A stretch of 64,000 bases of DNA from Octopus sinensis. Lineage: Eukaryota. The position numbers were made by a program, and so were the translations under genes. The stretch is from assembly GCF_006345805.1 (NCBI RefSeq), contig NC_043000.1, positions 32,922,001 to 32,986,000 of the forward strand. Direction: 5' to 3'. The notes below the pieces were generated by a model that worked only from the letters and a program-made list of their open reading frames with translations, made no database searches and had not been told where the DNA came from. Shown here piece after piece: positions 1,142 to 42,831 of the stretch (the stretch's first letter is position 1; the number at the start of each line of letters is the position of its first letter).

Positions 1142-1177
<36 letters not shown>

Positions 1178-1732: not shown

Positions 1733-2010
1733 CTGTTGTGTCTGGGGAGAGTCATTTTCTTTTTGTGCCTTATAATTTAACACACTCACCGGTAAAATTT
1801 CCACTTATTTCTTATTTTTATTTTCCTAAAATTTTCGTTGTGTCTTGCAACCTTTTCAATAGTTTTGACTATTGAAAAACTATCGAAAAGTTTGCAACAC
1901 GCAACGAAAACTTTAGGAAAATAAAAATAAGAAATAAGTGGAAATTTTACCGGTGAGTGTGTTAAATTATAAGGCACAAAAAAGAAAATGACTCTCCCCA
2001 GACACAACAG
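1733..2010. repeat. Long inverted repeat (fold-back), arms about 130 bp
   Basis: ctgttgtgtctggggagagtc... versus ...gactctccccagacacaacag; near-perfect until the centre. Confidence 0.92.
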
Positions 2011-3157
2011 TATTTGCAAACCAGTTTCACCAATATTGAAGTCAGCCTGCAACCAATAAAAAAGGCAACCTCTCTCTTGGCTGAAGTTTGCTGGGGTGTA
2101 GTACAAGACTGATTCCACAGCAACTGGGTGTCTGGAACTATTCATGGAAACTAGCTTCCTACATTTCTATTGGGGTTGCTTTAAAATAGCTGAAGAGTGT
2201 GGAGTGGGTGATGAGAGGTTCAGGTATGTGTTGGAGGGGTTTGAGTGTGAAAGGTTAAGAATGAGTGAAAGTTGGTCCCATTTGAGTAGAATCATGGAGA
2301 GTTTAAAACAAGTACCAGAAACTTCGTTTTGCAACATCTTACATTTGAATTTCTTAACATCTTCTCAAAGACTCCAGTGTACATTATATCCTATCTTACT
2401 CATAAAAATTTAACAAATTGTGACAGAAAAGGCTAACAGCCATCAATTGCTCACAGGTCCATAAATGTATTAAACTCAAAACAATTTTTTTAGAAAAGGT
2501 GTAAGATCACAGGGTACCCCAGTGACCCTGTGGGTCACTATCCACCTGTTACCTACCCCTGGTTTAGAAGGAACAGCGAAGAGGTGAGTATGTAAGGAAT
2601 AAATGTGATAAATAGATACATTCTACAATCCTGGTCATGTGTATCTGTACATTTGCCCACAAAAGTTTATAATTTCAAACTCCAGAATTTGGTTAATTTC
2701 ATTTCATGTCTTCATTATCATCGACATAGTGTATTACTGGTAGTTAACCATTGTCAATGAAATAAGCATCAACAAGAGTGACGCATCTATCATGTAGCAA
2801 TGGGTTCCACTGACCAACAGGATCAGACGAGACAGAGCAGTGCATTGAGCTCCAATATCACCTGTCATTTAGCTTAATTAAACCTTGTCCAATCAAGTGA
2901 AACCCTCGTTATAATTCCTGATCAATCTCACATTTGAAATAGTTGCAACAGTCACAGACAGTCCAAATGGACACGTCTTTTATTTCTCTTGTGTCAAGAA
3001 TTGTGGTAAAAAAATTGTCAAGGAAAACTGACAAAAACTTAAAACAAAATTGAGAAGAAGATAGAGGATGAAGGTGCTCCAACATGGCCAGAACCCCGTT
3101 GGAAGCTTATAAAAGGACAGTGTAATAAAAGAGAACTAGAAAATACACAAAACATAC

Positions 3158-3206
3158 CTTCACCATTTTTCAGGGGTTCTAAAAACTTCTCTAAGTTAAT
3201 GGAAGC
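3158..3206 (-). CDS. ORC5: ORC5 coding exon 7 (49 nt)
   Basis: Acceptor tttgttttccAG, donor GTATGT; ASINLEKFLEPLKNGE aligns to human AVLNFPKYCEPVVKGE as recalled. Confidence 0.88.
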
Positions 3207-6200
3207 CTGGAAAACAAACAAACAAAAACTATTGATTATAACTAAAACATTATTATAACTAGTATTGGTAGAAAAACTGTTGGTTCTAAGATTATTCCAT
3301 ATGATAACCATATATGCTTCTTAGAGCTAATGGGAGTTCATTGGCAGGAACAAAACATACAGCAGTCTTGGACAGTTGCTAACATACTTCATAACTTAAC
3401 TGTTGCTATTCCAACAGAAATTCTAAACATCTCAAACCATGATGACACACTCATCATCATCATCTTTATCAATTTCATGCCCACTTTTCCAAGAGTTTTC
3501 TATGGCTCGATGCCCTTTGTGTTACCAATCCTCACCTGTTTCCAAGAAAGGTAATTATTTCCTCATCATTCCACAGAAAATTGAAAATGGATGGTACCAT
3601 TTTGGTTTACTGCATACAATGGGCTTCTTTCAGTTTTCATTGACCAAATCAACTCACACAGCTGAGGTTAGCCTGGGGCTATAGTAGAAGACATTTGTCC
3701 AAGGTACAGCACAGTGAAACTGAATTCTAAACCATGCAAGCCGGGGAAAAAAAACACTTCTTAACCATACACCCAGTCATGCCTGCACCTATTAATTGTA
3801 AATCTGAGATCAAATACTTTACATGTGAAAACATAGGTGCTGGTATGGCTCTGTAGTAAGAAGCATGCTTAGTAACCAAATGGTTCTGGTTTCAGTCCCA
3901 CTGCATGGCATCTTGGGCAAATGTCTTCTACTACAGCCTGAGGCTGACCAAAACCTTGTGAGTGGATTTGGTAGATGGAAACTGAAAGAAGCCCATCATG
4001 TGCATGTGTGTTTGACCTCCCCACCACTGCTTGACAACCGGTGCTGGTGCGTTTACATCCCTGTGACTTAGCGGTTCAGCAAAAGAGACCGACAGAATAA
4101 GTACGAAGCTTTAAAAAAAAGTACTGAAGTTGATTCATTTGCCTAAGAATTCTTCAGGTTGGTGCCCCAACATGGCCACACACACACACAAACAAGCAGA
4201 CATTGAGTTTTGGCTGAATCTCCATGCCGGTGGCACGTAAAAAGCACCCACTACACTCTCGGAGTGGTTGGTGTTAGGAAGGGCATCCAGCTGTAGAAAC
4301 ACTGCCAGATCAGACTGGAGCCTGGTGCAGCCTCCTGGCTTCCCAGACCCCGGCTGAACCGTCCAACCCATGCTAGCATGGAAAACGGACGTTAAACGAT
4401 GATGATGATGAATTCAAGCTAAAACCAAAAAAGGCTGAGGTTTGTATGCCATGAGAAAAAGCAGAAGCTAAAATTTGGGGCAGAGTGTTTTCATAAAGAA
4501 ATCCATTTTGCCTTCAGATTCAGTGAAGGGCCTCACCCAAACCCTTAGTCCCCATTCCATTTCATGACGTAAAACCATAAACACTTTCCTTTCTATTTTC
4601 ACCACATGACCATCACTAACTTACCATTTTACTCTACTGACTCTGTGGAAAGCGCCATCCCTTAACAGTCTTTAGGGGTTTAAATGGTGTTGCATTACAA
4701 ACCACAACTATTCTTTGGTCTGAGTTTCATGGACTGTGATCCAGCTGGAGCACTTCCTTGTAGGGTTTTAGCTAAGTCAACTCCAGTACTAACCTGAAAC
4801 CATGTAGTTGTAAAGTGAACTTCACACAGCCATGCCTGAATATTGATTATTGATTTTGATAAATTATCGATTCCAAACAAAACAGAAATGTCTTTTATTT
4901 TAAATGATTGGAAGGAAGGTTAAAAGAATCAGAAAATCTTTTAAGTAATTTACGAACCAAATGTCGAAGCTCTTTCAGGTCTCGGCAGACATAATAAAAG
5001 ACACTTAACACCAAGCTGATGTAAGTGTCATACAATTCCTTTGGGTATTCCTTTGGATGGTCGAGAGACATAATTTCCAAGATCTCCTCTGTGGAAATAA
5101 AAACAAATAAGGAATTTGGAAGTTTGGCGGTTAATCATTAAATATTTTAGAAACAACAGAGTCTGGCAGTTAATTATTAAATATTTTAGAAACAACAGAG
5201 TCTGGCAGTTAATTATTAAATATTTTAGAAACAACAGGCGTAGGAGTGGCTGTGTGGTAAGTAGCTTGCTTACCAGCCACATGGTCTCGGGTTCATTCCC
5301 ATTGCATGGCACCTTGGGCAAGTGTCTTCTACTGCGTGGCACCTTGGACAGGTGTCTTCTACTATAACCTCAGCCCGACCAAAGCATTGTGAGTGGATTT
5401 GGTAAACGGAAACTGAAAGAAGCCCATCGTATATATGTGTGTATATATATATATATATATGTATATGTATGTGTGTGTTTGTGTGTCTGCGTTTGTCCCC
5501 CAACATCGCTTGACAACCGATGCTGGTTTGCTTACATCCCCGTAACATAGCAGTTTGGCAAAAGAGACTGATAGAATAAGTACTAGGCTTCCAAAGAATA
5601 AGTCCTGGGGTTGATTTGCTCAACTAAAGGCGGAGCTCCAGCATGGCCACAGTCAAATGACTGAAACAGATAAAAGAGTAAGAGTAAAGAGATGTAACAT
5701 TAAGTCCAACCTTTCTGAGAACATCCGTAGAGAGGAGTCACCATTGCACCAGAAACAGATTTCCTTAAATGGCAAGGGGGATTGCCAGAGGCAGCAGATA
5801 GTGTCTGTTACCTAGGTGACCAAATTAGCAGTGGAAGAGAATGCTCTGAAAGCATTAGTCACAAGAACGAGGAGAACCGACTGGAGAAAATTCAGAGAGA
5901 TATTATCTCTGTTGGTAACAGAAGGTCTCTGTCTCAGAATGGAAGCAGATTGTATGATGCTAGCAGAGAAATGGCAATGCTACATGGTAGTGAAATGTGG
6001 GCTGTGAATGCATGTTCCAGTGGATGTGCAACATCAGTGTGCATGTATGGCAAAGTGTAAATGTGTTGAGATAAAAATTGGTTATAAGAGGCATCAGATG
6101 TAGTGTGCAAGAGAGAAGACTGTACTGGTATGGTCATGTGATGCATATGGATGCAGTCAGCTGCATGAAGATGTGCCAATTTCTAAATGTGGAGGTGGCA

Positions 6201-9200
6201 TGTAAAAAGCACCCACTACACTCATGGAGTGGTTGGCATTAGGAAGGGCATCCAGCTGTAGAAACACTGCCAGATCAGACTGGAACCTGGTGCAGCCTCC
6301 TGGCTTCCCAGACCCTGGTCAAAATGTCCAACCCGTGCTAGCACGGAAAACGGACGTTAAACGATGATGATGATGATGATGCTGAACCTGTGGAAGAGGA
6401 AGACCCAGGAAGACATAGGATGAAATGGTGAGAAATGAACTTCAGATGTTGAGCCTCACAGAAGAGATGACAAACGCCTGCGATGATTGGTGATTGAGAA
6501 GACCCATCAAGCTAAATAAGACCTAGTGGGTTCTACTGAGAGTTGAACCTGAGACAGTAAAGTACCATATGTCTAAATGTTGGAGATGGGTTGTGAGCAA
6601 TCATCATCATCGTTTAACGTCCGCTTTCCATGCTAGCATGGGTTGGACGAATGACTGAGGGCTGGTGAACCAGATGGCTGCACCAGGCTTCAATCTTGAT
6701 CTAGCAGAGTTTCTACAATTGGATTCCCTTCCTAACGTCAACCACTCCGTGAGTGTAGTGGGTGCTTTTATGTGCCACCAACACAGGGCCAGTCAGGCGG
6801 TACTGGCAATGACCTCACTCGAATCTTTTACACATGCTACCGGCACAGGTGCCAGTAAGGCGATGCTGGTAACGATCATGCTTGAATGGTGCCCTTTTAC
6901 GTGCCACTGGCACAGAGGCCAGATAGACTCTCTGGCAACGATCACACTCGGATGGTGCCCTTAATACCCTACTAGCATGGGGCTTGAGTGCCAGTAATGC
7001 GACGCTGGTAACGATCATGCTCGAATGGTGCCTTTTAAGTGCCACTGGCATGGAAGCCGGTTAGCCGCTCTGTCAATGATCACACTCGTATGGTGCTCTT
7101 TGCACCTTGCTAGCATGGACGCCAGTCATCGAATTTGATTTTGAATTTTCTGGATTAATTATTTTAATTGAGAAATACAGGTCTTGAGTTAAAATCCAGT
7201 CAAGGACAATTTAGACATCCAAGATTAAGATAACTGATAACAATTTGAGTAGAAATTAATTAAAACCTTTGTAGACATGATATTTTGTAAATCTATGATT
7301 TAAAGAAGGATGTTTAAGGTGTGGGAAACTGTATGCCACCCTCTGAGTGTCTTGTTTCCCTGGGCATGGACACATTACAGCTCTGATGTCTGGCAACTAA
7401 CTTGGTAGACACCCACGAGATTATCCACCATCTTTTCAACAACAGCCCTGGACATCTTTTTGAATTCCATATGTCTAACTCTCATAGACATCATCATCAT
7501 CGTTTAACATCCGTTTTCCATGCTGGCATGGGTTTGATGGTTCGACCGGGGTCTGGGAAGCCAGGAGGCTGCACCAGGCTCCAGTCTGATCTGGCAGTGT
7601 TTCTACAGCTGGATGCCCTTCCTAACTCCAACCACTCCGTGAGTGTAGTGGGTGCTTTTTACGTGCCACCGGCATGGACGCCAGTCAGGTGGCGCTGGCA
7701 ACTGCCACGTTTGGATGGTGCTTTTAACGTGTTACCGGCACGGGTATCTTAACTACAATTTCCATTTGATTTTCATTTTCATGTTGGTGTTAACGTACTT
7801 GACTCAATAGGTCTCCTCAAGAACAGTGGGTCACTCTACGATCCAAGGTTAGCACAGCAGGCCGTCCTGCGAGCCATGGACTCACTTCATTTGTCGGGTG
7901 TTCGAAGTCAAGAACATGCTTACAAAATCAAAAGCAACACAGCAGACTTTTGGAAACATTTGTTGACACTCAGAATTGCTGAACCATGGAATAAACTATT
8001 TGCATCGCCTGTTAGCTGTTAGGATACTGTATCCTTCAAAACTTCCATGCTTCTCAAAATTCATCAAGACTACACCAGACATTCTTTTCCTTTTTTTTAT
8101 GATTCATTTACCGTTCCATTTCCTATCTTTCTGTGCATCATTCTATGTCCATGCACTTTTGGTTTCCTTTTCTGATGAGCTGTAGCACACCTGGGCACTG
8201 TATACAATAAGTTCATCATCATCATCACATTTCTCAGCCTGATTGTATGTAGATATCTTTTGATCAAAAGTGCCTTGACTATTGTTATTAATAATGCAGT
8301 CAGCTGGCAGTATCGTTAGCACGCCAGACAAAATGCTTAGCGGTATTTCGCCCGTCACTACATTTTGAGTTAAAATTTCACCAAGGTTGACTTTACCATT
8401 CATCCTTTTGAGGTTGATAAAATTAGTACCAGTTGAGTACTGGGGTCGATGTAATCAACTATCCTCCTCCCCTTAAATTTCAGGCCTTGTGCTTAAAATA
8501 GAAAGGATTATTATTATGATTATTATTATAATATAATTTTAGGGCAAAATAAATTCAACTGTTTAACTATCTTTAACAATAAGATTGGGTGGCAGATGAA
8601 AGGAGATTTGGTAAATGTAGAAACTTACCTCTTGAATAATCAGGGAAGTGGATAATATACGGCTCGTAGGTTCCAGTGTTGCAACGGAATTTTTCCCAAA
8701 CAATATCAGTGAGAAGAATAACAGAAATATTCAGATTGGTCTGAAAGATATCAAGACATACAGATCAGAAAATATAAAGCTTAAGGAACAGGACATGACA
8801 CACTTGCACAACAAGACAGGAACAGGGATCACCAGCTGATAGTCTCTAGTCTTCCGGATATTCATCTTCTTGTAGCTTGTGAGTAAAATCTAAGACCTCA
8901 ACACCACCACCTCTATCTCCATTGCAGCTACTCCCATCTACCCTCACACAGTGTGGGGTATCCATGTATCTCCTTTGTATCAAGACACCTATGCTTGTCC
9001 CTCAATACCTGGCATAAAGCCACCACTTTGCCATCTCTCAAATGCACTCCTACTCAGTCAAAGGCCCCCCCCTCTTCCTTTCCATTGTCTTGCGAGTTTC
9101 TTGGTGACCTCACTGGTGCTGGTGATAGGAATCAAATCACCCAGTACGTACTGGAAAAGTGGTTGGCATTAGGAAGGGCATCCAGCCATAGAAGCCATGC

Positions 9201-12200: not shown

Positions 12201-12663
12201 TCCCCCTTCTTCCCTCCCTCGTGAAGCTGTGGGGAAGGGAGTGTAAAGAAATCAACGTCGTAAAGCGTTGTCAAGGAGACCAGCGTTCTTTTAGAACAAT
12301 GACTTCATGGCTTGAAGAGACCAAAACAGAAATGGCTAAGAAAGCCCGAATTGGCATCTATAAGGGAAGTAACTCTCTAAAAATGCTTATATAGTTATTT
12401 CCCTTACAAACCCGAGCAACGCCGGGCAATACTGCTAGTATATATATATATATATATATATACTCTTACTCTCTTTTACTTGTTTCAGTCATTTGACTGC
12501 AGCCATGCTGGAGCACCACGTTTAGTCGAGCAAATATACCCCAGGACTTATTCTTTGTAAGCCTAGTACTTATTCTGTCGGTCTCTTTTGCCGAACCGCA
12601 AAGTTATGGGGACGTAAACACACCAGCATCAGTTGTCAAGCGATGTTGGAGGGACAAACCCAG

Positions 12664-12704
<41 letters not shown>

Positions 12705-15289
12705 AATACATATATACAATGGGCTTCTTTCAGTTTCCGTCTACCAAATCCACTCACAAGGCTTTGGTTGACCCGAGGCTATAGTAGAAGACACTTGCCC
12801 AAGGTGCCACGCAGTGGGACTGAACCTGGAACCATGTGGTTGGTAAGCAAGCTACTTACCACATAGCCACTCCTGCGCCAAATATATATATATATATGTT
12901 TATTTATTTATTATACAACAACAGGTTATATGCAATATATAAAACAATTTAGATGTGTTTCTTTCAAATAATTGAGCATTTTCCATTTTGTCAAATCAAG
13001 ATCAGAGAATTATAGTGACAGGGTGGAGAAACACAAAACGTTTATGCTGCACTGAGAATGGTATTATGTCATTCTGTAACTATTTTGAGAATGAACATGG
13101 GTGTGTCAATATCTGTGCGTTTGGGTGCACACACACACACACCACACACACACACAGGTAACTATTGCTTCATACAACTACCTGTAAAACTGTGCTGTAG
13201 ATTTAATAGTCCAAGTAGTTATACATACTTATAATAGTCATTGTGTTGATTTAAATATTTTTTCATAAGTAATTCCAAGCATACATTGTGTGTGTGTATA
13301 TGGGCATATACACATACACACATACAAAACGCCTATTTTCTAAATATGATATCAAAATTACATACCAGTTCTTGTAGTTTTAGCAAGCCCGATAAAATGT
13401 GTGGTTCCATCTGACGTAACTTTTCAGCTTTGTCAAGAACCTGTAAGAAATAAAACGCTAATTAAAAATGTATTAATAATAAAGTGTTTTGAGATCAACA
13501 ACAGAACATTTCTTAAGAAACAAAAGACACAGACATAGATGTGAAGATGGCACTTTGATTATTTACTTACCAAAACCATTTTTACTAACAACTATGAAGT
13601 AGGAAAGCCTAACTATAAGGAACATCATCATCATCATCATTGTTCAACCGTGGTCGAGACAATAGAATTTACTATGTACGCCAGACTTCACGGTCCATCA
13701 TAGCATTACGGAGGTCCTGTTGCTGGATGCCTGAATCCCTGGAGATTACATCAGGGTAGGAGTGTGTATGCCCTCTGGTATCACGAGCAGATGGCTTCCA
13801 GAGGAGAAGAGTAGAAATTACCTCGTTTTCAGCTCTACAACAATGTCCAGCAAACTGGACTCTTCTACCTTTCACAAGAGATGATACAGGTGGTAATTTC
13901 CCATATATTTGTACTTTGGTTGGATGATGCTTCCACGAGAGATTTTGAGCTCTCATAAGGAGGCGAGTGTAGGTTCCATCCAACCGCCTCTCAAGCTTCT
14001 TTGATAACATCCAGGTTTCTGAGCCTATAAGGAGCAAGTCTTCAGTTATAAGACATCTGGTACTGAACTCTTGCGTAATTGCCTCAAAAACTGTAGGGAA
14101 CAGAAAGGGTCTGAGAACAGACACTTGGGGAATATTTAAATGTATTCCCTGAATTAGTTTCCAATCCTCACTTTGCTAACAACACCCTCGTGTGTACCTT
14201 GGTACCCTCGTACACCAATATTACGAGGTGACTACAATACTAGGTTTCTGTAACTAATTATTATTAATTTCTGGGATTTCTTAACCCTCTACTGGGCTTT
14301 TCTGGGAAAAGTATGTCTCAAGAAAATATTTTACAAAATAGTCCGTCGACACGAATCATGTTTTTCCAAGTTGGCCAGATCGTTCTGACACACATGCGAG
14401 TTGCCTCATAAACCTTCTATGGTTGGACGTCAACAGTGATAGGCATGGATGGAACTTTTGGTCAGTTTCCACTTAACACTTAGAGTGCATGAATATTCAG
14501 CTTAGTGACCAGAGCTGTTGTTGATTTTATATTTGTTTTTATTACTTTTTGATCACCGTCTAATTAACAAAGAATAGTGAAGATGAATCGCCAGAGAGCG
14601 GAATATATTTTGCTAAAGTGGAAAACTTTAATGATGGCATCAACAGAGAGCAATACCATTTCCTCCGATGATGACAGATGCTGACAATTTGGATTGCAGT
14701 AGGTGAGGGTCTTCTGTTTCCAGCAAGAAGAAACAAAAAAAAAAAAAAATGGAAAATGAAATAATTTGTCTGGAAGGGGGTTAGAGTAATGAAGATAAGA
14801 TTTATTATTATATAAATAGAACTTGTGAAAACTATTCTTACAATATAAATGGTTTCCTCAGAATATCCAAGTTCTTGGACAGCTGCAGGCAATAAACGGC
14901 AAAAGTCGTTCAAGTTATCACATTTGGAATAGTCGTCAAATGACGGATGGTCTTCTTCCTCTTTGACATTTATTTTCAACAGAATCTGCTCATAAAGAAC
15001 TTTGGCACTGTAGCATTCTATACAATTGATCCACACAACTTTGCACTGCAAAACAAAGGGGAAAAACAAAAGAAAAAGATTATCTTTCATCTTTTACTTG
15101 TTTCAGTCATTTGACAGTGGCCATGCTGGGGCACTACCTTGAAGAATTTTTTATCGAATGTATCGATCCCAATACTTACGTTTTATAAGCCTGATACTTA
15201 TTCTATTGATCTCTTTTCCTGAACTGCTAAGTTACGGTGATGTAAACACACTAGCACTGGTTACCAAGCAGTGGCAGGGGTACAAATGC

Positions 15290-15337
<48 letters not shown>

Positions 15338-28380: not shown

Positions 28381-28573
28381 CTTGTTTGAGAGTTGATGAC
28401 TGAAGTGGAAAACCTAAAAGAAAAAAAACAGAATTAAGAAAATTCATGTAAAAAGAATAATAATAAATAATAATTAACATGGTACCTTCACTGGTGTTTT
28501 CTATGTGGCACAATTTTATTGGTGAAGTTTGAGGTTTACGTATTCATTGTGACGAAGAGCATAGAAAGGACCC

Positions 28574-28649
28574 ATCAGACACTGAGGTACATATCAGACA
28601 CTGAGGTACATATCAGACACTGAGGTACATATCAGATACTGAGGTACAT
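28574..28649. repeat. Minisatellite, 19-bp unit x4
   Basis: atcagacactgaggtacat at 28574, 28593, 28612 and 28631. Confidence 0.95.
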
Positions 28650-31600
28650 ACAGGGCATCATAACTACACCATAAGTGATTAGGTGTGACTATAGTGAAGT
28701 GGCTATTCAGGTGTGTGTAAGTGTGCAAAAGTAGGTATACAGTTATGAAAAAAAAAAGAAAACATGTACAATACTCATTTATTTTTATCAAAATAATTAA
28801 AAGTTACGAAAAAAGTATTATTATAGTTATGATAAATATATTATTATGATTAATGACAATGAAAATATCAAAAATGAGGCTAACTTTTAATTTTTATTCA
28901 TATAAAGAAATGAGTAGTATACATCATCATCATCATTTAACGTCCGCTTTCCATGCTAGCATGGGTTGGACGATTTTGACTGAGGGCAGGCGAACCAGAT
29001 GGCTGCACCAGGCTCCAATCTTGATATGGCAGAGTTTCTACAGCTGGATGCCCTTCCTAACGCCAACAACTCCGAGAGTGTAGTGGGCGCTTTTTACGTG
29101 CCACGGGCACGGAGGCCAGTCAGGCGGTACTGGCAACGACCTTGCTCAAATCTTTTTACATATGCCACCAGCACAGGTGCCAGTAAGGCGACGTTGGTAA
29201 CGATCACGCTCGAATGGTGTCCTTTTACGTGCCACTGGCACCGAAGCCAGTTGGCTGTTCTGGCAATGATCATGCTTGGATGGTGCTCTTGGCACCCTAC
29301 TAGCACAGGCACAAGTGCCAGTAAGGCGACGCTGGTAACAATCATGCTCGAATGGCGCCTTTTATGTGCCACTGGCACGGAAGCTGGTTAGCTGCTCTGT
29401 CAACGATCATGCTCGTATGGTGCTCTTTGCACCCTGATAGCACGGGCGCCAGTCATCGAATGTGATTTTGATTTTACTTGCCTCAACAGGTCTTTGCAAG
29501 CAGAGTTTAGTGTCCAAGGAAGGAAAAGGTACGTTTTCTTTTTTCATAACCGGATACCTACTTTTGCAATCTGCTGTATATAACTAAGCCATTAGTATCA
29601 TCATCACCATCATTGTTCAATGTCTATTTTCTATGCTGACATGGGTTGGACGGTTCAACAGGAACTGGTAAGGCTGGGACTTGCACCATGCTCCATCTGT
29701 TTTGGAATGGTTTATATAAATGGATGTCCTTCGCAATGCCAACCACTTTACAGAGTGTACTGGGTGCTTCGTACAAGGCGCCAGCACTGACAAGATCACC
29801 AAGTACCATGGAAGACAAAAATCCCTTCTGATGGAAGGAGGGAGTAACAGTGAAGGGCTGGTAAGCGAGAAGAATGAATCAAGCACCAGTGTTTGTTTTG
29901 GCATGGCTTTTATATGCCTGGGTACTTCTCACCAAAATCATGACCACAAGTCTCCAGCAATGGTCCACAACAACTCATTGAGGATGTCTGGACCCTGTAA
30001 CCTGAAACTGGCCATCATGACAATTTCTGACCCCTGAGAATGTTTCTTTGTCTTGGCCCTAGTTGAGATGTTCCTGCCAGAAGACCCAACTCTTTCCTGC
30101 CCTAAACATAAGGGATCCAACCATATTCAAGAAGATGCAGAATCAATTTTCTGCTGCATATTCATTGCATTAAATCATCATCTATTTATGGTCTGCAGAA
30201 ATTCTTCACAGCTGCCGACCATTTTCCTATGCTTGTATGGATCAGGTGGAATTTGCGAAGGCAGATTTCTATGGTCAGATGTTTTTCCAATTGCCAGGCT
30301 TCACTTGTTTCAGGTAAAATTTCTCCAAGGCCAGACATGTTTTTCATGGATGATTGGAAATGAACAACATTGCTTGTATGACAGAGAAGCTTGTTTACAA
30401 CCATCACATGATGTCAGGACAAGGATACAAACACACACACGTATGTATTGAGCTTCTTTCAGTTTCTTTTTACCAAATCCATTCATGAGGCTTAGATTGG
30501 CCAGTGCTGTAGAAGACCCTTGTCCAAGAGCCAAATGGTGGGACTGAACATGAAACCACAAGGTTAGGAAGCAAACTTCTCATCTCCATAGCCACACCTG
30601 TGTGTCAGGTGCATAAAATACCTGGCACACCCTGCAGACCATTGTTTAACGTCAACAATTCACATTCCCTATGCTGAGTGGCAACAAACTCAGCAATCTT
30701 CGTCTGTTTCAACCTTTGTTTTGTTGATTTTCTTTTGGAAACTCATTTCTATAATTCTATGAATGGTTTCAGTGAATGTCAGACAACTTCCTCTTTGGAC
30801 AATCAAGTTCCACCTCCTCTTCTTTCACCATTTCCTTACTCCAAATAATCTAACATTCCATTCTATTGAGACAATAAGTTTACTCTGGGTTGATAGGTAA
30901 CAACGTATATATGCATACACACCAGAATAGCAACTAACAATGAGACAAGAAGGAAGCAACTATGTGGTTGTCCAACCTGCTAGAAATAGCAGTCAAATCT
31001 CCTTAAAATTACAGACCGGCCATCTGAAACAAAGACAGAACATATCAGATAATATAGTCCTACACACCTATATAAAAGAGAGGATGGTCATGGCTGGAAT
31101 GCCTTTGATCAGGAATGTACTTGATCATGTTAAGCAACAACAATAAACAAAATATATGTAATAGAAAAGTGTAGCCAATGTGATCTGGCACTGACATGAT
31201 CGTCACAAGTTCATTGTCTGTAGTAGTAGTAGTAGTAGCAGCAGCAGCAACAGTAACTTGTAACGCAATAAACATACAGGACAATAAAAATGTTACCTTT
31301 GGCAAGATCTAACCGGTTTCTAGTAATTCGTCAGGTAAATTTATAAGTCAAGGAACAACAACAATAACGACAGCATCAAACAGCACAAAGAATAACAAAG
31401 AGATTTTTTTTCTGCTTCTTCTTCTTCCTAAACAACAACAACAACAACAGACACAACAAAAGTATTTTTAGGAGAACTGGTCTGACCGAGTCGCTCTCTC
31501 TTTCTCTTGTAAACATCTCCACCTCCAGGAATCTTTCAGGATCAACTCACACCCAACACTTGATTAACAGGTTTTACAGGTGAAATAGGTCACCGATTAA

Positions 31601-32240
31601 GCAACAAAGGTCAGAGAAATTGTTGGAGACACACACACAATCAGGAAACTCAGATATTGTTCTTTAGGATTCAAAAAAAGCAAAAAAAAAAGCTCACATT
31701 TCCCATTTTCAAAAATTCATTATTATTATTATTATTATTATTGTTATTACTATTACAAGTTTGTAGGGAGGGGAAGCAATTCAAAGATGGCTGCAGTAAA
31801 AGCTTAGATAACATTTGTCGGCGGGAATAAGCTTGGATTTCAAGAAATATTATAACAATCTGGGATTGAATATTTTCAAGAATTTGAAGCAATCATAAAG
31901 GTAAGATGATCCAATTTTATGGAATGGTGAAAAGCTGATATATATATATATTTTTAAGGTGTATGGCATGGTGGGGTAAATTTAATTTCATGGATAAAAT
32001 GATTTCAGCAAAGTGTTTTATGAAACTGAAATATGAGAAGAGCAAAATTATACATGATCCCTTTCTGCCACTTTGGTCCTATCTATAGGGTTGAATGGGG
32101 TTTAACAGGCACATCATCTGGGGCCCAGGTCATGGAAATTCCCATGTATATGTGAAGGCTCCCACTTATAACACACAAACAACTTCACTCTGGGATCCTA
32201 AAATCAATCTTATTCCTCTTCACAAAATCTCTCATAGTGG

Positions 32241-32241
<1 letters not shown>

Positions 32242-32329
<88 letters not shown>

Positions 32330-32366
32330 ATACATACATACACACACACACACACATATATATATA

Positions 32367-32432
<66 letters not shown>

Positions 32433-32440
32433 CATACATA
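32242..32440. repeat. Compound (TA)n/(CA)n/(TACA)n microsatellite with repeated blocks
   Basis: Read directly from sequence; produces the YI/HT/CV ORFs. Other microsatellites: 33600-33730 (TA), 41543-41593 (GCC/ACC), 27629-27646 poly-G, 42315-42545 AT-rich tandem repeat. Confidence 0.95.
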
Positions 32441-33593
32441 GGCACAGGAGTGGCTGTGTGGTAAGTAGCTTGCTAACCAACCACATGGTTCTGGGTTCAG
32501 TCCCACTGCGGAGATGTGTCTTCTACTATAGCCTTGGGCTGACAAAAGCCTTGTGGGTGGATTTGGTAGACAGAAACTGAAAGAAGCCTATCATATATAT
32601 ATATGTGTGTGTGTGTGTGTTTGTCCCCACAACATAGCTTGACAACTGATTCTGGTGTGTTTGCATTCCCGTAACTTGGCAGTTCGGTAAAAGAAACCTA
32701 TGACCAGACTATTTAGTGTCACAAGGAGGTACATGTTAATGCAAGGAAGATTGAATCAAAATCAATAAATATCGCTTGGATATTTACCACTTCTGAGGTT
32801 CCGCTCGCTATGAAACATATATAGCCTGGATCTTATCTACTCCATTCCACAACTCTTGTATTCTTATCACATACCCCACAACCCTGGTTGCCTGCTGAGG
32901 AATATAAAAAGAATTTTTTTCAATTTATCGTACTTCGATGAGAAAAAAAATTCTACAACTTTCCATTTCAATAAACCACTAATGTCCCTGGAAGTTGTTT
33001 TTTTTATTATTTGCTACGGTTTGCTTGAAGCTAACTTTCATCCTACACCTTGATCCTTGGATCTTATATTTGTATATATAATCATTGGTTAAGCACAATG
33101 CGAGTTTTTGAGGGAGGTAGAACTGATAAAACTGCCCCTAGAATAATTGGTGAAAATAAATTAAGACAAAACAAATCTTGAAATGGATTTTTGAACAAAC
33201 AAATGAACACACACACACAGGAGTGTTTAATGCATTCTTTCATTTGGATGTCTATATTTAAATATTGATCTCTAACAAGGCTATGTGTGGATATGCACAC
33301 ACACACACATATGTGTACTGTAGAGTCCAGCGAAACTATTTTACACATACTTAAGGGCTTTATAAAATTAAAATATAGTTTATTGTACTGAACGTTGATA
33401 AAGTGATATAAGGGCCTGATGATTGGGTTACATTTTAAGAAAGGTTCCAGGAAAACACGGAGTGGTTTAGGAACCCGAGGATGTGCCTCATGAAACACGT
33501 GTTGCCAAGTAATGAAACAGTAGGTATTTAAAATAAAAATAAAAATTCTTTTTATATGGTGAGATGTAGGGGCCTACTATCTCTAAATTAAAA

Positions 33594-33672
<79 letters not shown>

Positions 33673-34560
33673 CATGTATATATATGTGTATATATATATA
33701 TATATATATGTATAATATATATATATAACTTAGTCACAAGGTCTGCAATTTAATATAGGGATTAGTTGGTTTATATGGGCCTCAGAATTTGGTTATAATT
33801 ATTTTTTTTTTTTGATCCAGGAATGATGAAAGGTAAAGTAGGCCCTTGTAGGATTTTAAATGAATAGAAATAGATAAATAAAATGGTTTCCGTAAGATTT
33901 TCTTTGTCTTCTTTATACAAACTTAAATTTGGGTTTAACGTATCCCCTTAATTAAACATCAGCACCTGGTCCTTCAGTGATTTGTAGTTTCTTTTAACAA
34001 AATTAATTTTTTGGAAGTATTCAGGCAAGGGTCTCCGTCAGAGGATAACTTGGTGTCCTGATGTGGCAGTGCTTCTTAGTGCAGCAGCCCAGGAATCATG
34101 GTTCTACTTCCCCAGCCCCACAACCCCTACAGTCTTGGAGACTTTATAAAAGGTTATGACTGCTGCTCTTGTCTCTCTGACACAGATAACTATAAGATAT
34201 TGCAGGACCCCTAAACCCACATCATTCAGACACTGTATTTTGGTCATTTCTTGCAAAGTTCTCTCACCTTAATTTCCATTCCCCACCTGCTTCTATTTTT
34301 CGGCAGTTCCTCTGAACATACAAGGTTCTCAAAATTTACATTATTTCCTCATTTAGATTAGAAAAGTGGGGTCTCACCTGCAGCTACTGTATTTAGAAGG
34401 CTAAGAAACAACCTTGAACTCAGGTGATTTATCAGACAGTGACCCAAAGAGACACTGTACAACACTCTTATTCTCCCAATCACAGACTTTGTCTTGGAAA
34501 CTTTGACCCTAAAATCTAAAGATAAACAAAAAGTAGAACTTTTTGAAATGTGCTGTTTAA

Positions 34561-34780
34561 CCCTTTCGTTACTGTATTTATTTTGAGATGCTCTGTGTTT
34601 CTTTCAATTACTTTAAATATAACAAAGAATTTAGTAAAACAACTTAGTTATCATTAAGCTAGTGTTAGGAACATAAATTGCGACTAAGGTTTGGTGGAAG
34701 ATTTTGATCCAAAATTTATGAAAACAAGACATTTATACTCAGAGCCAGAGCCAGTTTCAGCTGGATTGGTAATGAAAGGG
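34561..34780. mobile_element. piggyBac-like MITE
   Basis: TTAA|CCCTTTCGTTAC ... GTAATGAAAGGG|TTAA (11/12 TIR match, TTAA TSD). A related decayed copy at about 19850-20456 keeps only the right end. Confidence 0.85.
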
Positions 34781-35023
34781 TTAAGGCATAGACTAGAGAT
34801 GTTACAAGACATGTGCTTCCATAAGAGATTTCCACCTGACAGTTTCAAAGACTGGGAAAGAGATGAAAATGTAAGAAGACAGCCATACCAGAATTATGAA
34901 ATGCTGATAGTTTGTCAAGTCTTACCATATTCTAGACAACATGGAAGAGTGTCTAAGAGGTAGACGTAGGCAACAGTGGAGGACACAGTCCAGAGGTACT
35001 GAGACTAACTAGATGTCATTAAC

Positions 35024-35300
35024 GATACACGGATGGGATGCCAACTGCACTTTTGCCGAAGGACAAGAAGCCGAGTGGACACAATGCCAAATGGACATAA
35101 AGCCGAACAGACAAGATGCCGAAAAGACATATGAAAATTAAAATTTAATCTCATTAAATCTTAAGTGCCAAATTGGTGAATTGGTCATTAAACTGTGTAG
35201 GTAGGAATGTTTTTTTTTAATTATTGTGTCCATTCAGCATTGAGTCCATTCGACTCCTTGTCCTTTGGCAAAAGTGCATTCAGCATCCTGTCCATGAATG
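35024..35300. mobile_element. Mutator (MULE)-like MITE
   Basis: 9-bp TSD gtcattaac at 35015-35023 and 35301-35309; about 75-bp imperfect TIRs with repeated ggac..aatgccgaa submotifs. Confidence 0.75.
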
Positions 35301-35389
35301 GTCATTAACAGTCGCTTCTGATTGTAGTGAGAGAAAATTAGGTTTTGAGGGTTATTTTTGCTTTGAAGGTCAGTTTTATTAAGCTTTAA

Positions 35390-35614
35390 CCCATTAAACC
35401 CCAGAGTACTTAAATTTCTGAATATTATTTAAAAATTTTTACAGATTATTGAAAATAGGTTAAAATGAAAAAGTAGTTATTAAAACTCCTTTACTTCAAG
35501 TAGAAATGGAAATACTCGGTGTCCTACAAATAGGACACTGATATAACAATGTGATATAGCTCATTTAATGTTCTCATTTAGTGTCCTATTTATAGAACAG
35601 TGGGACTTAATGGA
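35390..35614. mobile_element. piggyBac-like MITE (second family)
   Basis: TTAA|CCCATTAAACCCCA ... TGGGACTTAATGGA|TTAA. Confidence 0.65.
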
Positions 35615-36439
35615 TTAATATCAAAAATATTATTAAAATCCACAAACTCAAAAGGGTAAACAAGAGTTACCATTGTTCTTATTGGAATAAATGTGGAGGT
35701 GGTGGTGGTGGATCTCTGTTGTTGAACAATGAGGATTCAATTATTTGATCTACTGAGTTAGCTGCCCCTGAATTAATGCATGACTGTCTGAGTATTCCAA
35801 AGACACAAGAAGTACTCCTTAATGTAATTCTCATGGGTGGAATCAGGGTGGCACTATGTGACATAAAGCTGCACCTTTTGAAATACAGCTGCAAGCCACC
35901 CTGGTTGCTTTCTTTTATACGGTTTCCCATCTGAGTGAGGGCTGTAGAAAGAAAGATAGTTGCCTAAGACGTGATGTAGTGGATTGAACCAGGGACCTCA
36001 AGGTTACAAAGTAAGACTTCTTAACTGATTACATCCTGTTGCATTTATTGAAATATATATAAATACCCCTAAAACGGAAACAGTTTTGTCCTAAACAACT
36101 GTTCTTTAGTTTGTTCCAGTTGTTACATCAAAAGCCATACTGGAGCACTATGGAGGTGTAGTTGATAGATGGAACCATGTGTAACAGGTTGAGAAGTTTA
36201 CTTTGCAATTATCAGGTCATGGGTTCAATTTTACTGACTGGCAGTGTTGGACAGTTGTGATTTTGACTACAGCCTTGGGTCGACCCAGGCTTTCTAAGTA
36301 AAACTGGCAAATGGAAACTGTGTGGAAGCCTGTCCTATGATACAGAACATAACATGATTTTAGGGGTCTCTCAAAGAAAACAACAAAAGTCTAAAGATTT
36401 TGGCAGATCAAAGCAATAACAACAACAACACTGCCATCC

Positions 36440-37990
36440 AATGGTGCATTGTGGTCAACAGAAACACAAGACCCTGACTAATAACTATTTGGTAAGCGTC
36501 ATCCTTAACATTTGCAGAGAAAAGTCAACAAGTCATTTATGGAAATAATTGTCCTGCCAGGTTCTCTGTAAGAGTGCTGAAGGCAGCAACTTGCAAATCT
36601 CTGAAGGAAATCACTAGATGCAAGTTTCATTCCCCAAAACTTCCTCTTCCAGTTGGCCATCCTAGTTTTTTAAAAAAGATACAAATTGCTCCTAATAAAT
36701 TACTATCCTATCTCACTAACCTCTTGTATCATCAAAATATTTGAGAGAGGGAGAGAGTGATGACATGAAGAATAATTGCTTTCCTAGAGGAAAACCATTT
36801 TCTACCATCACAGTTTTCATGGTGGCAACTGGGTGACATAACCACCACACCACTTTTGATGACCTTTTAAATGCCCTGAGTGAGGGCCCCAGCACCGATG
36901 TTACATCCCTTGATTTCAATAAAGCCTTTCACAGGGTTGATCACAATGTAGTGTTAAAGAAATTATCTGACAGTGGAGTCTGTGGGAAGCTGTTGCAATG
37001 GATTGAGTGTTTCCTGAAAAACAAAACCCTACACATGAATGACGGAATCCAGCCAAGAACTGCAAAAGTCATCAGTAGAGTCCCGCAGGGTACTGTGCTG
37101 GGCCCACTTTTTATTATTTATAGAAACGACATTGCAGATTTCATCAAACATAGCAGCATGAAAATCTTTGCAGTTGAGTCTAAGTTTTAGGAAGTCTTCA
37201 AAACAATGACCGAGTGAATGAAACTTGAATCAGATCTATAAGCAGTGACCCCAGTGGACATAAGAAAAACACAACTGACTGAGGGAAAATTCAAGCTCAT
37301 CCACTTTGGAAAAGAGAACATCTTCAAACCATATTCAGTACCATCAGGAGACCTATTTGTACCTATTTCTTTACTACCCACAAGGGGCTAAACACAGAGA
37401 GAACAAAGAAGGACAGACAAATGGATTAAGTCGATTATATCGACCCTGAAAGGATGAAAGGCAAAGTTGACCTCAGCGGAATTTGAACTCAGAACGTATC
37501 GGCAGACGAAATACTGCAAAGCATTTTGCCCGGTATGCTAACGTTTCTGCCAGTTCGCCTTAGGAGACCCATTTGTACCATTGAATAATATCAGAGATTT
37601 AGGTGTAACTGTCAGCAAAAATTTGTACAGCACACATTAACAAAGAAGTCGATATGGCCCTCAGAATGTGCTCATAGATCCTCAGAACTCTTCAGTCTAG
37701 ACATCGTGAAACCATCATGCTGGGTCTCACTTCAAATACTGCTGCCCATTGCGGTCCCTTTGCACAAAACAAAATATATTGTGGATTGAAACATTGCAGA
37801 GAGTCTTGCTTTATTCAACATCATCCTGAAGGAAATTAATGTAGAAAAAGACCCCACAACATTCAAATGGTACCTGGACAAATTCCTCTAAAAAGTACCA
37901 GACAAACCACCAACACATGTGGGTACGTCTCAGGCAGCAATAGCTCTTTGCTTGAATGGTCTACAGTGTCCCGAAGCAGAACTTAAAAGA
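36440..37990 (+). mobile_element. Degenerate CR1/L2-clade LINE RT remnant
   Basis: DFNKAFHRVDHNVVLKKL...VPQGTVLGPLFIIYRNDI...MKIFA; many disablements; interrupted by a SINE. Confidence 0.8.
37364..37561 (-). mobile_element. SINE family 2 inserted in a CR1-like remnant with an 18-bp TSD
   Basis: aggagacctatttgtacc (37346-37363) and aggagacccatttgtacc (37562-37579) flank the SINE. Other family 2 copies: 8302-8500(+), 25626-25810(+), 28014-28230(-), 38090-38295(+). Confidence 0.9.
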
Positions 37991-38902
37991 CCTCTCTAGG
38001 TACTGCTATTAAGTTAGTCATGTCCTGGGCTGATAATAGCTGAAATCAATTTAAGCTATTTAAGTGATGATAGTTGTAGAGAATTAAGTGGTAAGCTGGC
38101 AGAATCATTAACATGCTGGGTGAAGTGCTTAACGGTATTTTGCCCATCACTATGCTCTGAATTCAAATTCTGCTGAGGTCGACCTTGTCGTTCATCCTTT
38201 CAGGGTCAATAAATTAAGTACCAGTGAAACACTTGGGTTGATGTAATCGGCAAGTCCCCTCCCCCAAATTTCAGGCCTTGTGCCAATAGTAGAAAGGCTG
38301 TTTGTAGAAATTATGCATGGAATTTGTAGCAAAGTGTCTCACACAACCCAATAAAGAAATACCAAATGTTATGTGCTTAATTCAATGTTTTGTTTTGATT
38401 TTCTGTAATTCTTTCATCTAAAACAAGTCAGTTTGGTTGGAACTTCATTTGCTCTGTCCTCACAGAGTTGGAGGAAGAGATTAGACAATGGTAATGACAC
38501 AAGATTTCAGTTTCTAAGATAATTTATAACTCAATAATAACAATTTCTTTGTTTAGTAAATATTGAATAAACAAAAAAGAAAACCTCGTTAAGCATATAA
38601 TTAAGAAAATCATTAGAAAGAGGAGATACACGTTTCACTTATTTATTATTCAACATTTGCGGCGACAACGGTGGTGTGGTCACAAGTGTTGAAAATGGAA
38701 ATCTATGTTAGAAACTCTCGTGTTTCTATTAACATAAATTTCCCCATTATTTGTTTTGTAGTAGCAGTAGTAACATCTCTATTTAAATGACAATGTTTCC
38801 TTTAATGATAAAACAGCCAGCAGCTGAAAGCCTTTCCTACCATTAACTTGGAGAAATTCTTTCTGTATTTCAGAACGCAAACTTCAACCGAAACGAAACA
38901 AA

Positions 38903-39311
38903 ATGGATGTGAAATACACACAGGAAACTACCCAGGTTTACTACTTTAAATACATGAGAGAATATCGAGCTGTGGCCGTTCTTTGGGGGATTCTGACCAT
39001 AATCTGGTGCATCCTTACTGTTGTGGCTTTTGTCCAGCCACAATGGATTGGAGATACCGAGTCTAGTCCAGGCTATGGTCATTTCGGAGTTTATGCTTAT
39101 TGTTACCCAACTACAACAACATGGAGGTATGGCTGTAAAGGATCTTTCACCAATTTTGCTTCAATTCCAAATGGAGCATTCAAAGCAGTGACATTATTCG
39201 TCGGAATATCCGCTCTGCTCAGTTTGATTTGTGTGGCAACGCTTCTGCTCTTCTTTTGCTTCAAAAAGGTTATTGTGTTCAACCTCTGTGGAATCATGGA
39301 AATTATTTCAG
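38903..39311 (+). CDS. LHFPL3: LHFPL-like coding exon 1 (409 nt)
   Basis: ATG at 38903, donor GTAAGA at 39312 (phase 1). A candidate acceptor tttctgtatttcAG at 38872-38873 suggests an upstream UTR exon. Confidence 0.93.
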
Positions 39312-42300: not shown

Positions 42301-42831
42301 CTTAGAACCATGACATACTCTTTAATTTAATGTTAATTTAATACTCTTTAATTTTAATGTATTTTAATGTATTAATGTATTTTAATGTATTAATGTATTA
42401 ATTAATTTTTATTTAATGTATTTTAATTAATTTTAATACTCTTTAATTTTAATTTTAATACTCTTTAATTTTAATTTTAATACTCTTTAATTTAATTTTA
42501 ATACTCTTTAATTTAATTTTAATACTCTTTAATTTAATGTTTATTAAATATATCATCTCACTTGCGACCAGTAATTAGGGTTGATATAAAAATAGAGAAA
42601 GTTTAGTAATAGTTTTTTTGGAAATCTGATGAAATTTTGCTTCTTACAAGTTTGTTGTGTTTTTTCCTATTTTCAGCTGAGCTGTATCCTAACTACAACG
42701 ACACAATGCGTTCACAGGCGACAATCATCCGACCCACCATGATGACCGTTCCTGATCTTGGAGATACATACTCAGAATATTCCCATATTTCAAATAAGAA
42801 ATCCCTTATCAATTCTAGCTTCCAGTTATAA
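38903..42831 (+). CDS. LHFPL3: LHFPL tetraspan family protein (LHFPL3/4/5, TMHS-like), 3 coding exons, 267 aa
   Basis: MDVKYTQETTQVYYFKYMREYRAVAVLWGILTIIW...QPQWIGD...GHFGVYAYC...CKGSFTNFASIPNGAFKA... and CIIYPSGWD...MCG...YKLGKCGIRWAYILAILGIIDA match the LHFPL3/4/5 family. The symbol is tentative: this is probably a single invertebrate co-orthologue. Confidence 0.93.
41673..41912 (+). CDS. LHFPL3: LHFPL-like coding exon 2 (240 nt)
   Basis: Acceptor tcttcattccAG, donor GTAAAT at 41913, phase 1 at both ends. Confidence 0.93.
42677..42831 (+). CDS. LHFPL3: LHFPL-like coding exon 3 (155 nt, ends ...NSSFQL-stop)
   Basis: Acceptor ttcctattttcAG, in frame with exon 2, TAA at 42829-42831. Confidence 0.85.

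What the first reader, a model, noticed from the sequence alone, without database searches (positions are those of the whole stretch)
3158..42831. ORC5 and LHFPL3-like genes are head-to-head, as in human 7q22: candidate ancient bilaterian microsynteny
The sequence shows ORC5 on minus and an LHFPL3/4/5 gene on plus, start codons 10.5 kb apart, with no other recognisable host gene between them. From memory, human ORC5 (minus) and LHFPL3 (plus) are neighbours in the same divergent orientation. Coleoid genomes are known for extensive rearrangement, so keeping a replication gene next to a neuronal/hair-cell tetraspan gene suggests a regulatory constraint such as a shared promoter or enhancers in introns.
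Basis: partly seen in the sequence, partly recalled or inferred. Interest (0 to 1): 0.75.

Follow-up and report, generated by a model that had tools for sequence, protein, structure and literature searches.

The report
Ancient ORC5–LHFPL head-to-head gene pair
In this octopus DNA a DNA-replication gene (ORC5) and a neuronal/hair-cell membrane gene (LHFPL3/4/5 type) sit back-to-back as they do in limpet, mussel, acorn worm and human, so the pairing dates to early bilaterian animals, but it is one of several hundred such pairs and is already listed in a published synteny catalogue.

Summary
ORC5 lies on the minus strand: seven coding exons, 28380 down to 3158, encoding the N-terminal 251 aa. The rest of the gene runs off the left edge. 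A three-exon LHFPL gene lies on the plus strand (38903-42831). The start codons are 10,523 bp apart and nothing recognisable lies between them.

The interpretation as ancient microsynteny is supported. The same divergent ORC5/LHFPL pair is present in Octopus vulgaris, Argonauta, Lottia, Mytilus and the hemichordate Saccoglossus. Human ORC5 and LHFPL3 are neighbours. The pair was not seen within 10 kb in a tardigrade, rotifer, flatworm, crab or the annelid Owenia.

The LHFPL gene belongs to the LHFPL3/4/5 group (100% bootstrap against LHFPL1/6). It is, however, the more divergent of two mollusc paralogues. In Argonauta the second copy lies about 39 kb downstream on the same strand.

The pair is not new. 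Robert et al. 2022 list ORC5-LHFPL4-Poxn in Euprymna as bilaterian-age block 2322.

Why the pair is kept is untested. I favour entangled 5' regulatory regions. A long-range enhancer (GRB) constraint or neutral retention remain possible. Interest is low to moderate.

The parts
28291..28380 (-). ORC5 coding exon 1 (ATG at 28380; 30 codons)
   Evidence: tblastn. Donor GAAAG|gtaaag. A polypyrimidine tract plus AG acceptor at about 28415 just upstream of the ATG implies a further non-coding 5' exon.
17637..17729 (-). ORC5 coding exon 2 (Walker A, GHTGTGKT)
14842..15045 (-). ORC5 coding exon 3
13366..13440 (-). ORC5 coding exon 4
8629..8740 (-). ORC5 coding exon 5
4958..5088 (-). ORC5 coding exon 6
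3158..3206 (-). ORC5 coding exon 7 (start of the ORC5 lid domain); last ORC5 exon detectable in the window
28381..38902. Interval between the two start codons (10,522 bp). It holds no recognisable gene, only SINE-like copies, microsatellites and a short stretch that by eye resembles a reverse-transcriptase fragment (36951-37190; no Pfam match). By the O. vulgaris annotation the 5' ends of the two genes map to about 34929 (ORC5) and about 36360 (LHFPL).
   Evidence: No unique sequence is conserved with Argonauta.
38874..39311 (+). LHFPL exon carrying the ATG (38903). It follows a strong acceptor (ctgtatttcag|AACGC), so at least one non-coding exon lies upstream.
   Evidence: Pfam PF10242
41673..41912 (+). 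LHFPL coding exon 2
42677..42831 (+). LHFPL coding exon 3 with the stop codon

Best explanation
SHOWN: this is an ancestral bilaterian pair of unrelated genes, ORC5 and an LHFPL3/4/5-type tetraspan gene. They are transcribed divergently from adjacent 5' ends, and octopus inherited the arrangement.

INFERRED: the pair stays together because the 5' regulatory regions of the two genes are entangled. In the compact ancestral state the two promoters lay within about 1-2 kb of each other, so almost any breakpoint between the genes would damage one or both. This is the 'co-regulated 5'-5' pair' class of Irimia et al. 2012.

In octopods the coding starts have been pushed apart by repeat insertions, to 6.9 kb in Argonauta and 10.5 kb here. 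Both genes appear to keep upstream non-coding first exons, and the annotated starts of those exons are only about 1.4 kb apart.
For: Divergent adjacency was found in O. vulgaris, Argonauta, Lottia, Mytilus and Saccoglossus. Human ORC5 and LHFPL3 are adjacent, and mouse Orc5 and Lhfpl3 were both assayed in a study of the 5A3 interval syntenic to human 7q22.

In the compact genomes the called gene ends are close: about 0.7 kb in Saccoglossus, 1.2 kb in Lottia and 2.2 kb in Mytilus.

In the window, splice acceptors sit directly upstream of both ATGs. The O. vulgaris gene ranges map to about 34929 and about 36360, 1.4 kb apart.

Irimia et al. report that most conserved ancestral pairs are 5'-5', keep that orientation and have short intergenic regions. 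In Mytilus, Lottia and Argonauta the ORC5-adjacent LHFPL copy is the same paralogue (A) as in the window.
Against: No transcription-start, chromatin or expression data were available for any cephalopod.

CpG observed/expected is low (0.05-0.55) across the annotated 5' ends. It peaks instead at the two ATG exons, 1.04 at 28.0-28.5 kb and 0.82 at 38.5-39.0 kb. The real promoters may therefore be about 10 kb apart.

No unique non-coding sequence is shared between Octopus and Argonauta in the interval. No E2F motif lies in the interval.

In human, ORC5 is ubiquitous and LHFPL3 is brain-specific. From memory, their 5' ends are about 120 kb apart. A shared promoter cannot explain retention in vertebrates.
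Confidence: 0.45

Rival explanations
1. Genomic regulatory block. Tissue-specific enhancers for LHFPL, or for the nearby paired-box gene Poxn, lie inside ORC5 introns or beyond ORC5. ORC5 is then a housekeeping 'bystander' that cannot be moved away.
For: Human expression is discordant, ORC5 ubiquitous and LHFPL3 brain-specific, as in target/bystander pairs. ORC5 has long introns here (10.6, 4.6 and 3.5 kb). In Euprymna the catalogued block is HDAC11-LIN37-ORC5-LHFPL4-Poxn, and in Owenia an LHFPL gene lies next to a PAX gene. Retention across a human gap of about 120 kb (from memory) fits long-range elements better than a shared promoter.
Against: LHFPL is not a developmental transcription factor. 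No paired-box exon is in the window. Vertebrates keep the pair although, as far as I know, they lack Poxn. No conserved non-coding block was found between Octopus and Argonauta in the intergenic region, the proximal part of ORC5 intron 1 or the LHFPL introns. The distal ORC5 introns could not be compared.
Confidence: 0.2
2. Neutral retention. The pair is ancestral but under no special constraint. It survives because gene order changes slowly in molluscs, hemichordates and, at this scale, vertebrates, and it is one of the survivors among about 20,000 ancestral adjacencies.
For: Lophotrochozoans retain 93% of bilaterian-age blocks. Euprymna retains 275 metazoan microsyntenies. The pair is gone in every sampled lineage that I know to rearrange fast, namely tardigrade, rotifer and flatworm. 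No conserved non-coding sequence was detected.
Against: Orientation is identical in every lineage that keeps the pair. The pair survives in coleoids despite large-scale reorganisation and in vertebrates, which lost 84% of bilaterian blocks. Conserved pairs as a class exceed shuffled-genome expectation.
Confidence: 0.3
3. Convergent or artefactual adjacency. The genes are not true orthologues, or the neighbourhood arose independently, or it reflects misassembly.
For: The mollusc LHFPL copy next to ORC5 (A) is less similar to vertebrate LHFPL3/4 (43-46%) than the second copy B is (51-52%). A+B monophyly is not recovered.
Against: ORC5 identity is unambiguous. All LHFPL copies concerned fall in the LHFPL3/4/5 group at 100% bootstrap. 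In Argonauta, A and B lie in tandem about 39 kb apart, both next to ORC5. The arrangement is seen in independent assemblies of six species.
Confidence: 0.03

Closest known systems
Bilaterian microsyntenic block 2322 of Robert et al. 2022 (BMC Genomics 23:143, PMC8851819, Supplementary Dataset 3)
   Same: In Euprymna scolopes it lists ORC5 and an LHFPL gene (named LHFPL4) in one block together with HDAC11, LIN37 and Poxn, and it is labelled 'Bilateria novel'. This is the same gene pair, in a coleoid, with the same inferred age.
   Different: It is a catalogue entry only. No paper in the searched library pairs 'ORC5' or 'LHFPL' with the word 'microsynteny' in its text. Orientation, spacing, the tandem LHFPL paralogues and the link to human are not described there. 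The other block members (HDAC11, LIN37, Poxn) are not in this window.
Conserved ancestral microsyntenic pairs (CAMPs), 5'-5' co-regulated class, Irimia et al. 2012 (PMC3514665)
   Same: Two unrelated genes, divergent orientation, orientation conserved across phyla, and short intergenic distance in compact genomes.
   Different: Whether this pair is in their list could not be checked, because the supplement is not held. Co-expression, a prediction for this class, is contradicted by the human data.
Genomic regulatory blocks (Kikuta et al. 2007; Irimia et al. 2012)
   Same: A housekeeping gene with long introns sits next to a tissue-specific gene. A Pax-family gene is in the wider block in Euprymna and Owenia.
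   Different: No developmental transcription factor is in the window, and no conserved non-coding elements were detected.
Human 7q22 ORC5-LHFPL3 locus
   Same: The same two gene families are immediate neighbours. From memory, they are divergent in orientation.
   Different: From memory, the human gap is about 120 kb, against 10.5 kb (ATG to ATG) here. Vertebrates have three 2R-type paralogues (LHFPL3/4/5), of which only LHFPL3 is next to ORC5. Molluscs have their own two copies, A and B, tandem in Argonauta.

Membership tests
Ancient (bilaterian) conserved microsyntenic pair | Orthologues of both genes are immediate neighbours in species of at least two major bilaterian clades | tested here: met
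   Spiralia: Octopus, Argonauta, Lottia, Mytilus. Deuterostomia: Saccoglossus and human (paper).
Ancient (bilaterian) conserved microsyntenic pair | The two genes are not paralogues of each other | tested here: met
   One is an AAA+ ORC5 protein and the other a PF10242 tetraspan protein.
Ancient (bilaterian) conserved microsyntenic pair | Relative orientation is conserved | tested here: met
   The orientation is 5'-5' in all five invertebrate genomes. Human orientation comes from memory only.
Ancient (bilaterian) conserved microsyntenic pair | Occurrence above what shuffled genomes give | not tested
   I made only a back-of-envelope estimate, about 5e-5 per lineage for chance adjacency. Published pipelines did the shuffling for the class as a whole.
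Bidirectional-promoter gene pair | Transcription start sites less than about 1 kb apart | tested here: inconclusive
   Called gene ends are 0.7 kb apart (Saccoglossus), 1.2 kb (Lottia), 2.2 kb (Mytilus) and 1.4 kb (O. vulgaris annotation mapped to the window). The ATGs are 10.5 kb apart and CpG o/e peaks at the ATG exons. No TSS data were available.
Bidirectional-promoter gene pair | Correlated expression of the two genes | not testable with these tools
   No cephalopod expression data were available. In human the two genes are discordant.
Genomic regulatory block | A developmental regulator as target gene within the block | tested here: not met
   No paired-box or other transcription-factor exon is in the window. 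Poxn/PAX is in the wider block only in Euprymna and Owenia.
Genomic regulatory block | Conserved non-coding elements in the bystander introns or the intergenic region | tested here: inconclusive
   No unique Octopus-Argonauta blastn matches were found outside exons in window 26-44 kb. The distal ORC5 introns were not comparable, and blastn misses short elements.
LHFPL3/4/5 subfamily | Full-length PF10242 domain, grouping with LHFPL3/4/5 rather than LHFPL1/6 | tested here: met
   Pfam. PDB LHFPL4 at 3e-57 and LHFPL5 at 4e-54. The NJ split has 100% bootstrap. LHFPL2 and TMEM211 were not included.
LHFPL3/4/5 subfamily | One-to-one orthology with the vertebrate gene next to ORC5 | tested here: not met
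   Molluscs have two copies. A lies next to ORC5 and is 43-46% identical to LHFPL3/4. B is 51-52% identical and lies 39 kb downstream in Argonauta.
ORC5 | AAA+ domain, ORC5 lid and ORC5 C-terminal domain; best match to ORC5 among ORC/Cdc6 proteins | tested here: met
   AAA_16 and ORC5_lid are encoded in the window. Human ORC5 matches at 8.6e-74 against 1e-6 for Cdc6-like proteins. ORC5_C lies outside the window but is present in the O. vulgaris gene product.

The most novel reading that the evidence does not exclude
The ORC5/LHFPL pair may be held together by a specific, functionally required cis-regulatory coupling that has persisted for more than 550 million years. One form would be neural or sensory LHFPL enhancers embedded in ORC5. 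Another would be a divergent promoter whose ORC5 side keeps chromatin open for the tissue-specific LHFPL side. In molluscs the coupling would extend to a tandem LHFPL A/B pair, and it would survive the coleoid genome reshuffling.
Probability: 0.3. Interest if true: 0.45.

Novelty: already known. Interest (0 to 1): 0.25.

Why it matters
The finding is a clean, well-anchored example of deep microsynteny that survives in a coleoid genome. The orientation is the same from octopus to acorn worm, and the two genes are also neighbours in human. That makes it a convenient test locus for how conserved pairs are held together. The intergenic region is short enough in Lottia, Mytilus and Saccoglossus for reporter assays, and the octopus and human versions show how far such a pair can be stretched. 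It does not open a new question. Hundreds of such pairs are known, and this one is already in a published block list.

Tried and rejected
- **Octopus ORC5 protein.** A database search with the joined ORC5 exons returned no octopus protein. I built the exon model from orthologues and splice sites instead.
- **Possible eighth ORC5 exon at 2668-2609.** It is a weak tblastn match (E about 0.7). I rejected it because it has no in-phase acceptor and stop codons lie upstream.
- **Conserved non-coding elements.** Octopus against Argonauta by blastn across window 26-44 kb gave only SINE and microsatellite hits.
- **E2F motif as a marker of the ORC5 promoter.** There is one site in the window, none in the interval, and fewer than chance expectation.
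- **Paired-box (Poxn) exon to the right of LHFPL.** None is in the window.
- **Second LHFPL paralogue (B) in the window.** It is absent.
- **Published lists.** The supplements of Irimia 2012 and Touceda-Suarez 2020 are not held. The Schmidbaur 2022 supplements have no ORC5 or LHFPL entry in the stored text.
- **First bootstrap labels.** I discarded the Biopython clade-based labels because they are unreliable near the root after re-rooting. I recomputed supports by bipartition.
- **Vertebrate orientation and distance.** No vertebrate species had both proteins among the retrievable hits, and the 10-kb flanks are too short, so these could not be checked with the tools.
Full report
**What the window is.** The window is octopus genomic DNA. 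Its LHFPL protein differs by one residue from Octopus vulgaris P0001. Window 26470-53238 aligns at about 98% identity to the O. vulgaris chromosome OX597817.1 near 139.04 Mb. It therefore comes from another individual or a sister species of the O. vulgaris complex. About 38% of the window is repeated within itself.

**ORC5.** tblastn with ORC5 proteins from Mytilus, Arion, Dreissena and Latimeria marks co-linear minus-strand matches.
- Reading the splice sites gives seven coding exons: 28380-28291, 17729-17637, 15045-14842, 13440-13366, 8740-8629, 5088-4958 and 3206-3158.
- All junctions are GT-AG. The exons join into an uninterrupted 251-aa N-terminal sequence.
- That sequence matches Pfam AAA_16, AAA_22 and ORC5_lid.
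- It matches human ORC5 chains in the PDB at E=8.6e-74 over residues 9-251. Cdc6-like proteins score about 1e-6.
- A database search with the joined exons returned only ORC5 proteins, the best being Mytilus at 51% identity, E=9e-72.
- The C-terminal half, including the ORC5_C domain, lies beyond the left edge. A weak match at 2668-2609 has no usable acceptor and is taken as chance.

**LHFPL.** The gene has three plus-strand coding exons (38903-39311, 41673-41912, 42677-42831) encoding 267 aa with a full PF10242 domain. The ATGs are 10,523 bp apart.

**The interval between the genes.** The O. vulgaris annotation calls no gene there. The seven of its ORFs that I tested (79-138 aa) have no Pfam match, and Rfam finds nothing in the window.

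**Where the genes really start.**
- Both ATG exons are preceded by strong acceptor sites: ttttcttttag|gttttcc before the ORC5 ATG and ctgtatttcag|AACGC before the LHFPL ATG.
- Mapping the O. vulgaris gene ranges onto the window puts the ORC5 5' end at about 34929 and the LHFPL 5' end at about 36360, roughly 1.4 kb apart.
- Against this, CpG observed/expected is low (0.05-0.55) through that region. It peaks at the ATG exons, 1.04 at 28.0-28.5 kb and 0.82 at 38.5-39.0 kb.
- The sequence alone therefore cannot fix the start sites.

**Is the linkage ancient?** I looked up the genomic context of ORC5 or LHFPL orthologues, with 10-kb flanks.

| Species | Arrangement | Spacing | Call |
|---|---|---|---|
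| O. vulgaris | ORC5(-) / LHFPL(+), head-to-head | ~1.4 kb between called gene ends | 11 |
| Argonauta hians | head-to-head | 6.9 kb ATG to ATG | 40, 54 |
| Lottia gigantea | ORC5 832-8774(-), LHFPL 10001-11964(+) | 1.2 kb | 37 |
| Mytilus edulis | LHFPL 2176-7744(-), ORC5 10001-37588(+) | 2.2 kb | 12 |
| Saccoglossus kowalevskii (hemichordate) | ORC5 to 9306(-), LHFPL from 10001(+) | 0.7 kb | 14 (ORC5 exons confirmed) |

- In mouse, Orc5 is named among the genes inside the deleted 5A3 segment syntenic to human 7q22, and Lhfpl3 was among the genes assayed in that study (PMC4569895).
- The pair was not found within 10 kb in Hypsibius, Adineta, Macrostomum, Eriocheir or next to the one Owenia LHFPL gene retrieved.
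- The same two families, in the same divergent orientation, occur in molluscs and a hemichordate, and are neighbours in mammals. Convergence is not credible. Linkage in the bilaterian ancestor is the only reasonable reading.

**Orthology of the LHFPL gene.** I obtained verified LHFPL6 and LHFPL1 sequences. A memory-typed query was 95% identical to Manis LHFPL6. I also took an LHFPL4 sequence from the PDB alignment.
- In a neighbour-joining tree of 213 columns, bootstrapped by bipartition, all LHFPL3/4/5-like proteins including the octopus one separate from LHFPL1/6 in 100% of replicates.
- The octopus protein is 43-46% identical to vertebrate LHFPL3/4 and 22-27% identical to LHFPL1/6.
- Molluscs have two copies. 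Clade A (100%) contains the window's gene and the ORC5-adjacent genes of Argonauta and Lottia. The Mytilus ORC5-adjacent gene was not in the tree, but it matches the A proteins far better than the B proteins by tblastn.
- Clade B (100%) is closer to vertebrate LHFPL3/4 (51-52% identity).
- In Argonauta, B lies about 39 kb downstream of A on the same strand. The local order is therefore ORC5 <- -> A -> B.
- B is outside this window. In Lottia it is on another scaffold.
- The tree does not resolve whether the duplication is mollusc-specific with a fast-evolving A copy, or older. B plus deuterostomes gets 51% and A+B gets 1%.
- Either way both copies belong to the ORC5 neighbourhood, and the subfamily assignment stands.

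**Is it known?** No paper in the library pairs 'ORC5' or 'LHFPL' with the word 'microsynteny' in its text.
- The syntenic-density database of Robert et al. 2022 (PMC8851819, Supplementary Dataset 3) lists, for Euprymna scolopes, block 2322. It is labelled 'Bilateria novel' and contains HDAC11, LIN37, ORC5, LHFPL4 and Poxn.
- In Acanthaster the same block number holds SBP_bac_3-family genes and FBXO18. The Owenia LHFPL gene is flanked by an SBP_bac_3 gene and a PAX gene, which fits that block.
- The pair is therefore already catalogued as bilaterian-age in a coleoid, though never discussed individually.
- The general phenomenon is well described:
  - conserved ancestral pairs, mostly 5'-5' (Irimia et al. 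2012);
  - 256 bilaterian blocks, 93% kept in lophotrochozoans and 84% lost in vertebrates;
  - 275 metazoan microsyntenies kept in Euprymna despite genome reorganisation.

**Mechanism.** Nothing here demonstrates a regulatory constraint.
- I favour entanglement of the two 5' regulatory regions (confidence 0.45). The reasons are the strict conservation of divergent orientation, the 0.7-2.2 kb spacing in compact genomes, and the indications of upstream non-coding exons in octopus.
- A GRB-type constraint (0.2) fits the discordant human expression and the large human gap. It lacks a developmental target gene and lacks detected conserved non-coding sequence.
- Neutral survival (0.3) cannot be excluded. 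The pair is kept where gene order changes slowly and lost in the sampled lineages known to rearrange fast.
- Convergence or artefact is effectively excluded (0.03).

**Verdict.** The proposed regulatory cause is open. The finding is an already catalogued member of a well-known class, so interest is low to moderate.

Noticed in passing
L009/L010 (Argonauta hians BAAFZT010000053.1: 4,497,426-4,503,013 and 4,542,422-4,547,513): Molluscs carry two LHFPL3/4/5-type genes. In Argonauta they lie in tandem on the same strand about 39 kb apart, with the divergent copy (A) next to ORC5. The copy more similar to vertebrate LHFPL3/4 (B) is the distal one. B is not in this window, and in Lottia it is on another scaffold.
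   Followed up: partly
window 48769-51887 (+): An apparently intact non-LTR retrotransposon ORF of 866 aa with endonuclease, reverse transcriptase and a weak, below-threshold PHD/C1-like zinc-finger match, followed by a 155-aa ORF. ORF translations at 20774-21426 (inside ORC5 intron 1) and 53398-53701 look by eye like degenerate copies of it.
   Followed up: partly
window 10675-11199, 15457-15623, 51935-52969: Minisatellite arrays of a 61-64-bp GC-rich unit, 17 copies in the largest array. They create long spurious ORFs in several frames. By eye, a separate short ORF motif (...LQLDALPNANHS...), which I take to mark a SINE-like element, recurs in many ORFs across the window.
   Followed up: partly
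window 28000-28500 and 38500-39000, against 34900-36400: CpG observed/expected peaks at the two ATG-bearing exons (1.04 and 0.82). It is low (0.17-0.55) where the O. vulgaris annotation places the 5' ends of both genes. Either the annotated 5' exons are not at unmethylated promoters or the annotation over-extends.
   Followed up: no
L003 (Owenia fusiformis CAIIXF020000005.1): An LHFPL3/4/5-type gene is flanked by an SBP_bac_3-domain gene and a paired-box gene, with no ORC5 within 10 kb. This matches other members of published block 2322 (SBP_bac_3 genes in Acanthaster, Poxn in Euprymna).
   Followed up: partly
L002 (Mytilus edulis) 10001-10069 against 17287-17442: The annotated Mytilus ORC5 protein starts with a short exon that has no counterpart in other ORC5 proteins. 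The conserved N-terminal exon lies 7.3 kb further in. The 2.2-kb spacing to LHFPL therefore depends on an unverified first exon.
   Followed up: no
window 26470-53238 against L001: The window is only about 98% identical to the O. vulgaris reference assembly, with indels. It has one amino-acid difference in LHFPL (V for M in DDYS[V/M]TGK). This suggests another individual or a sister species of the O. vulgaris complex.
   Followed up: no
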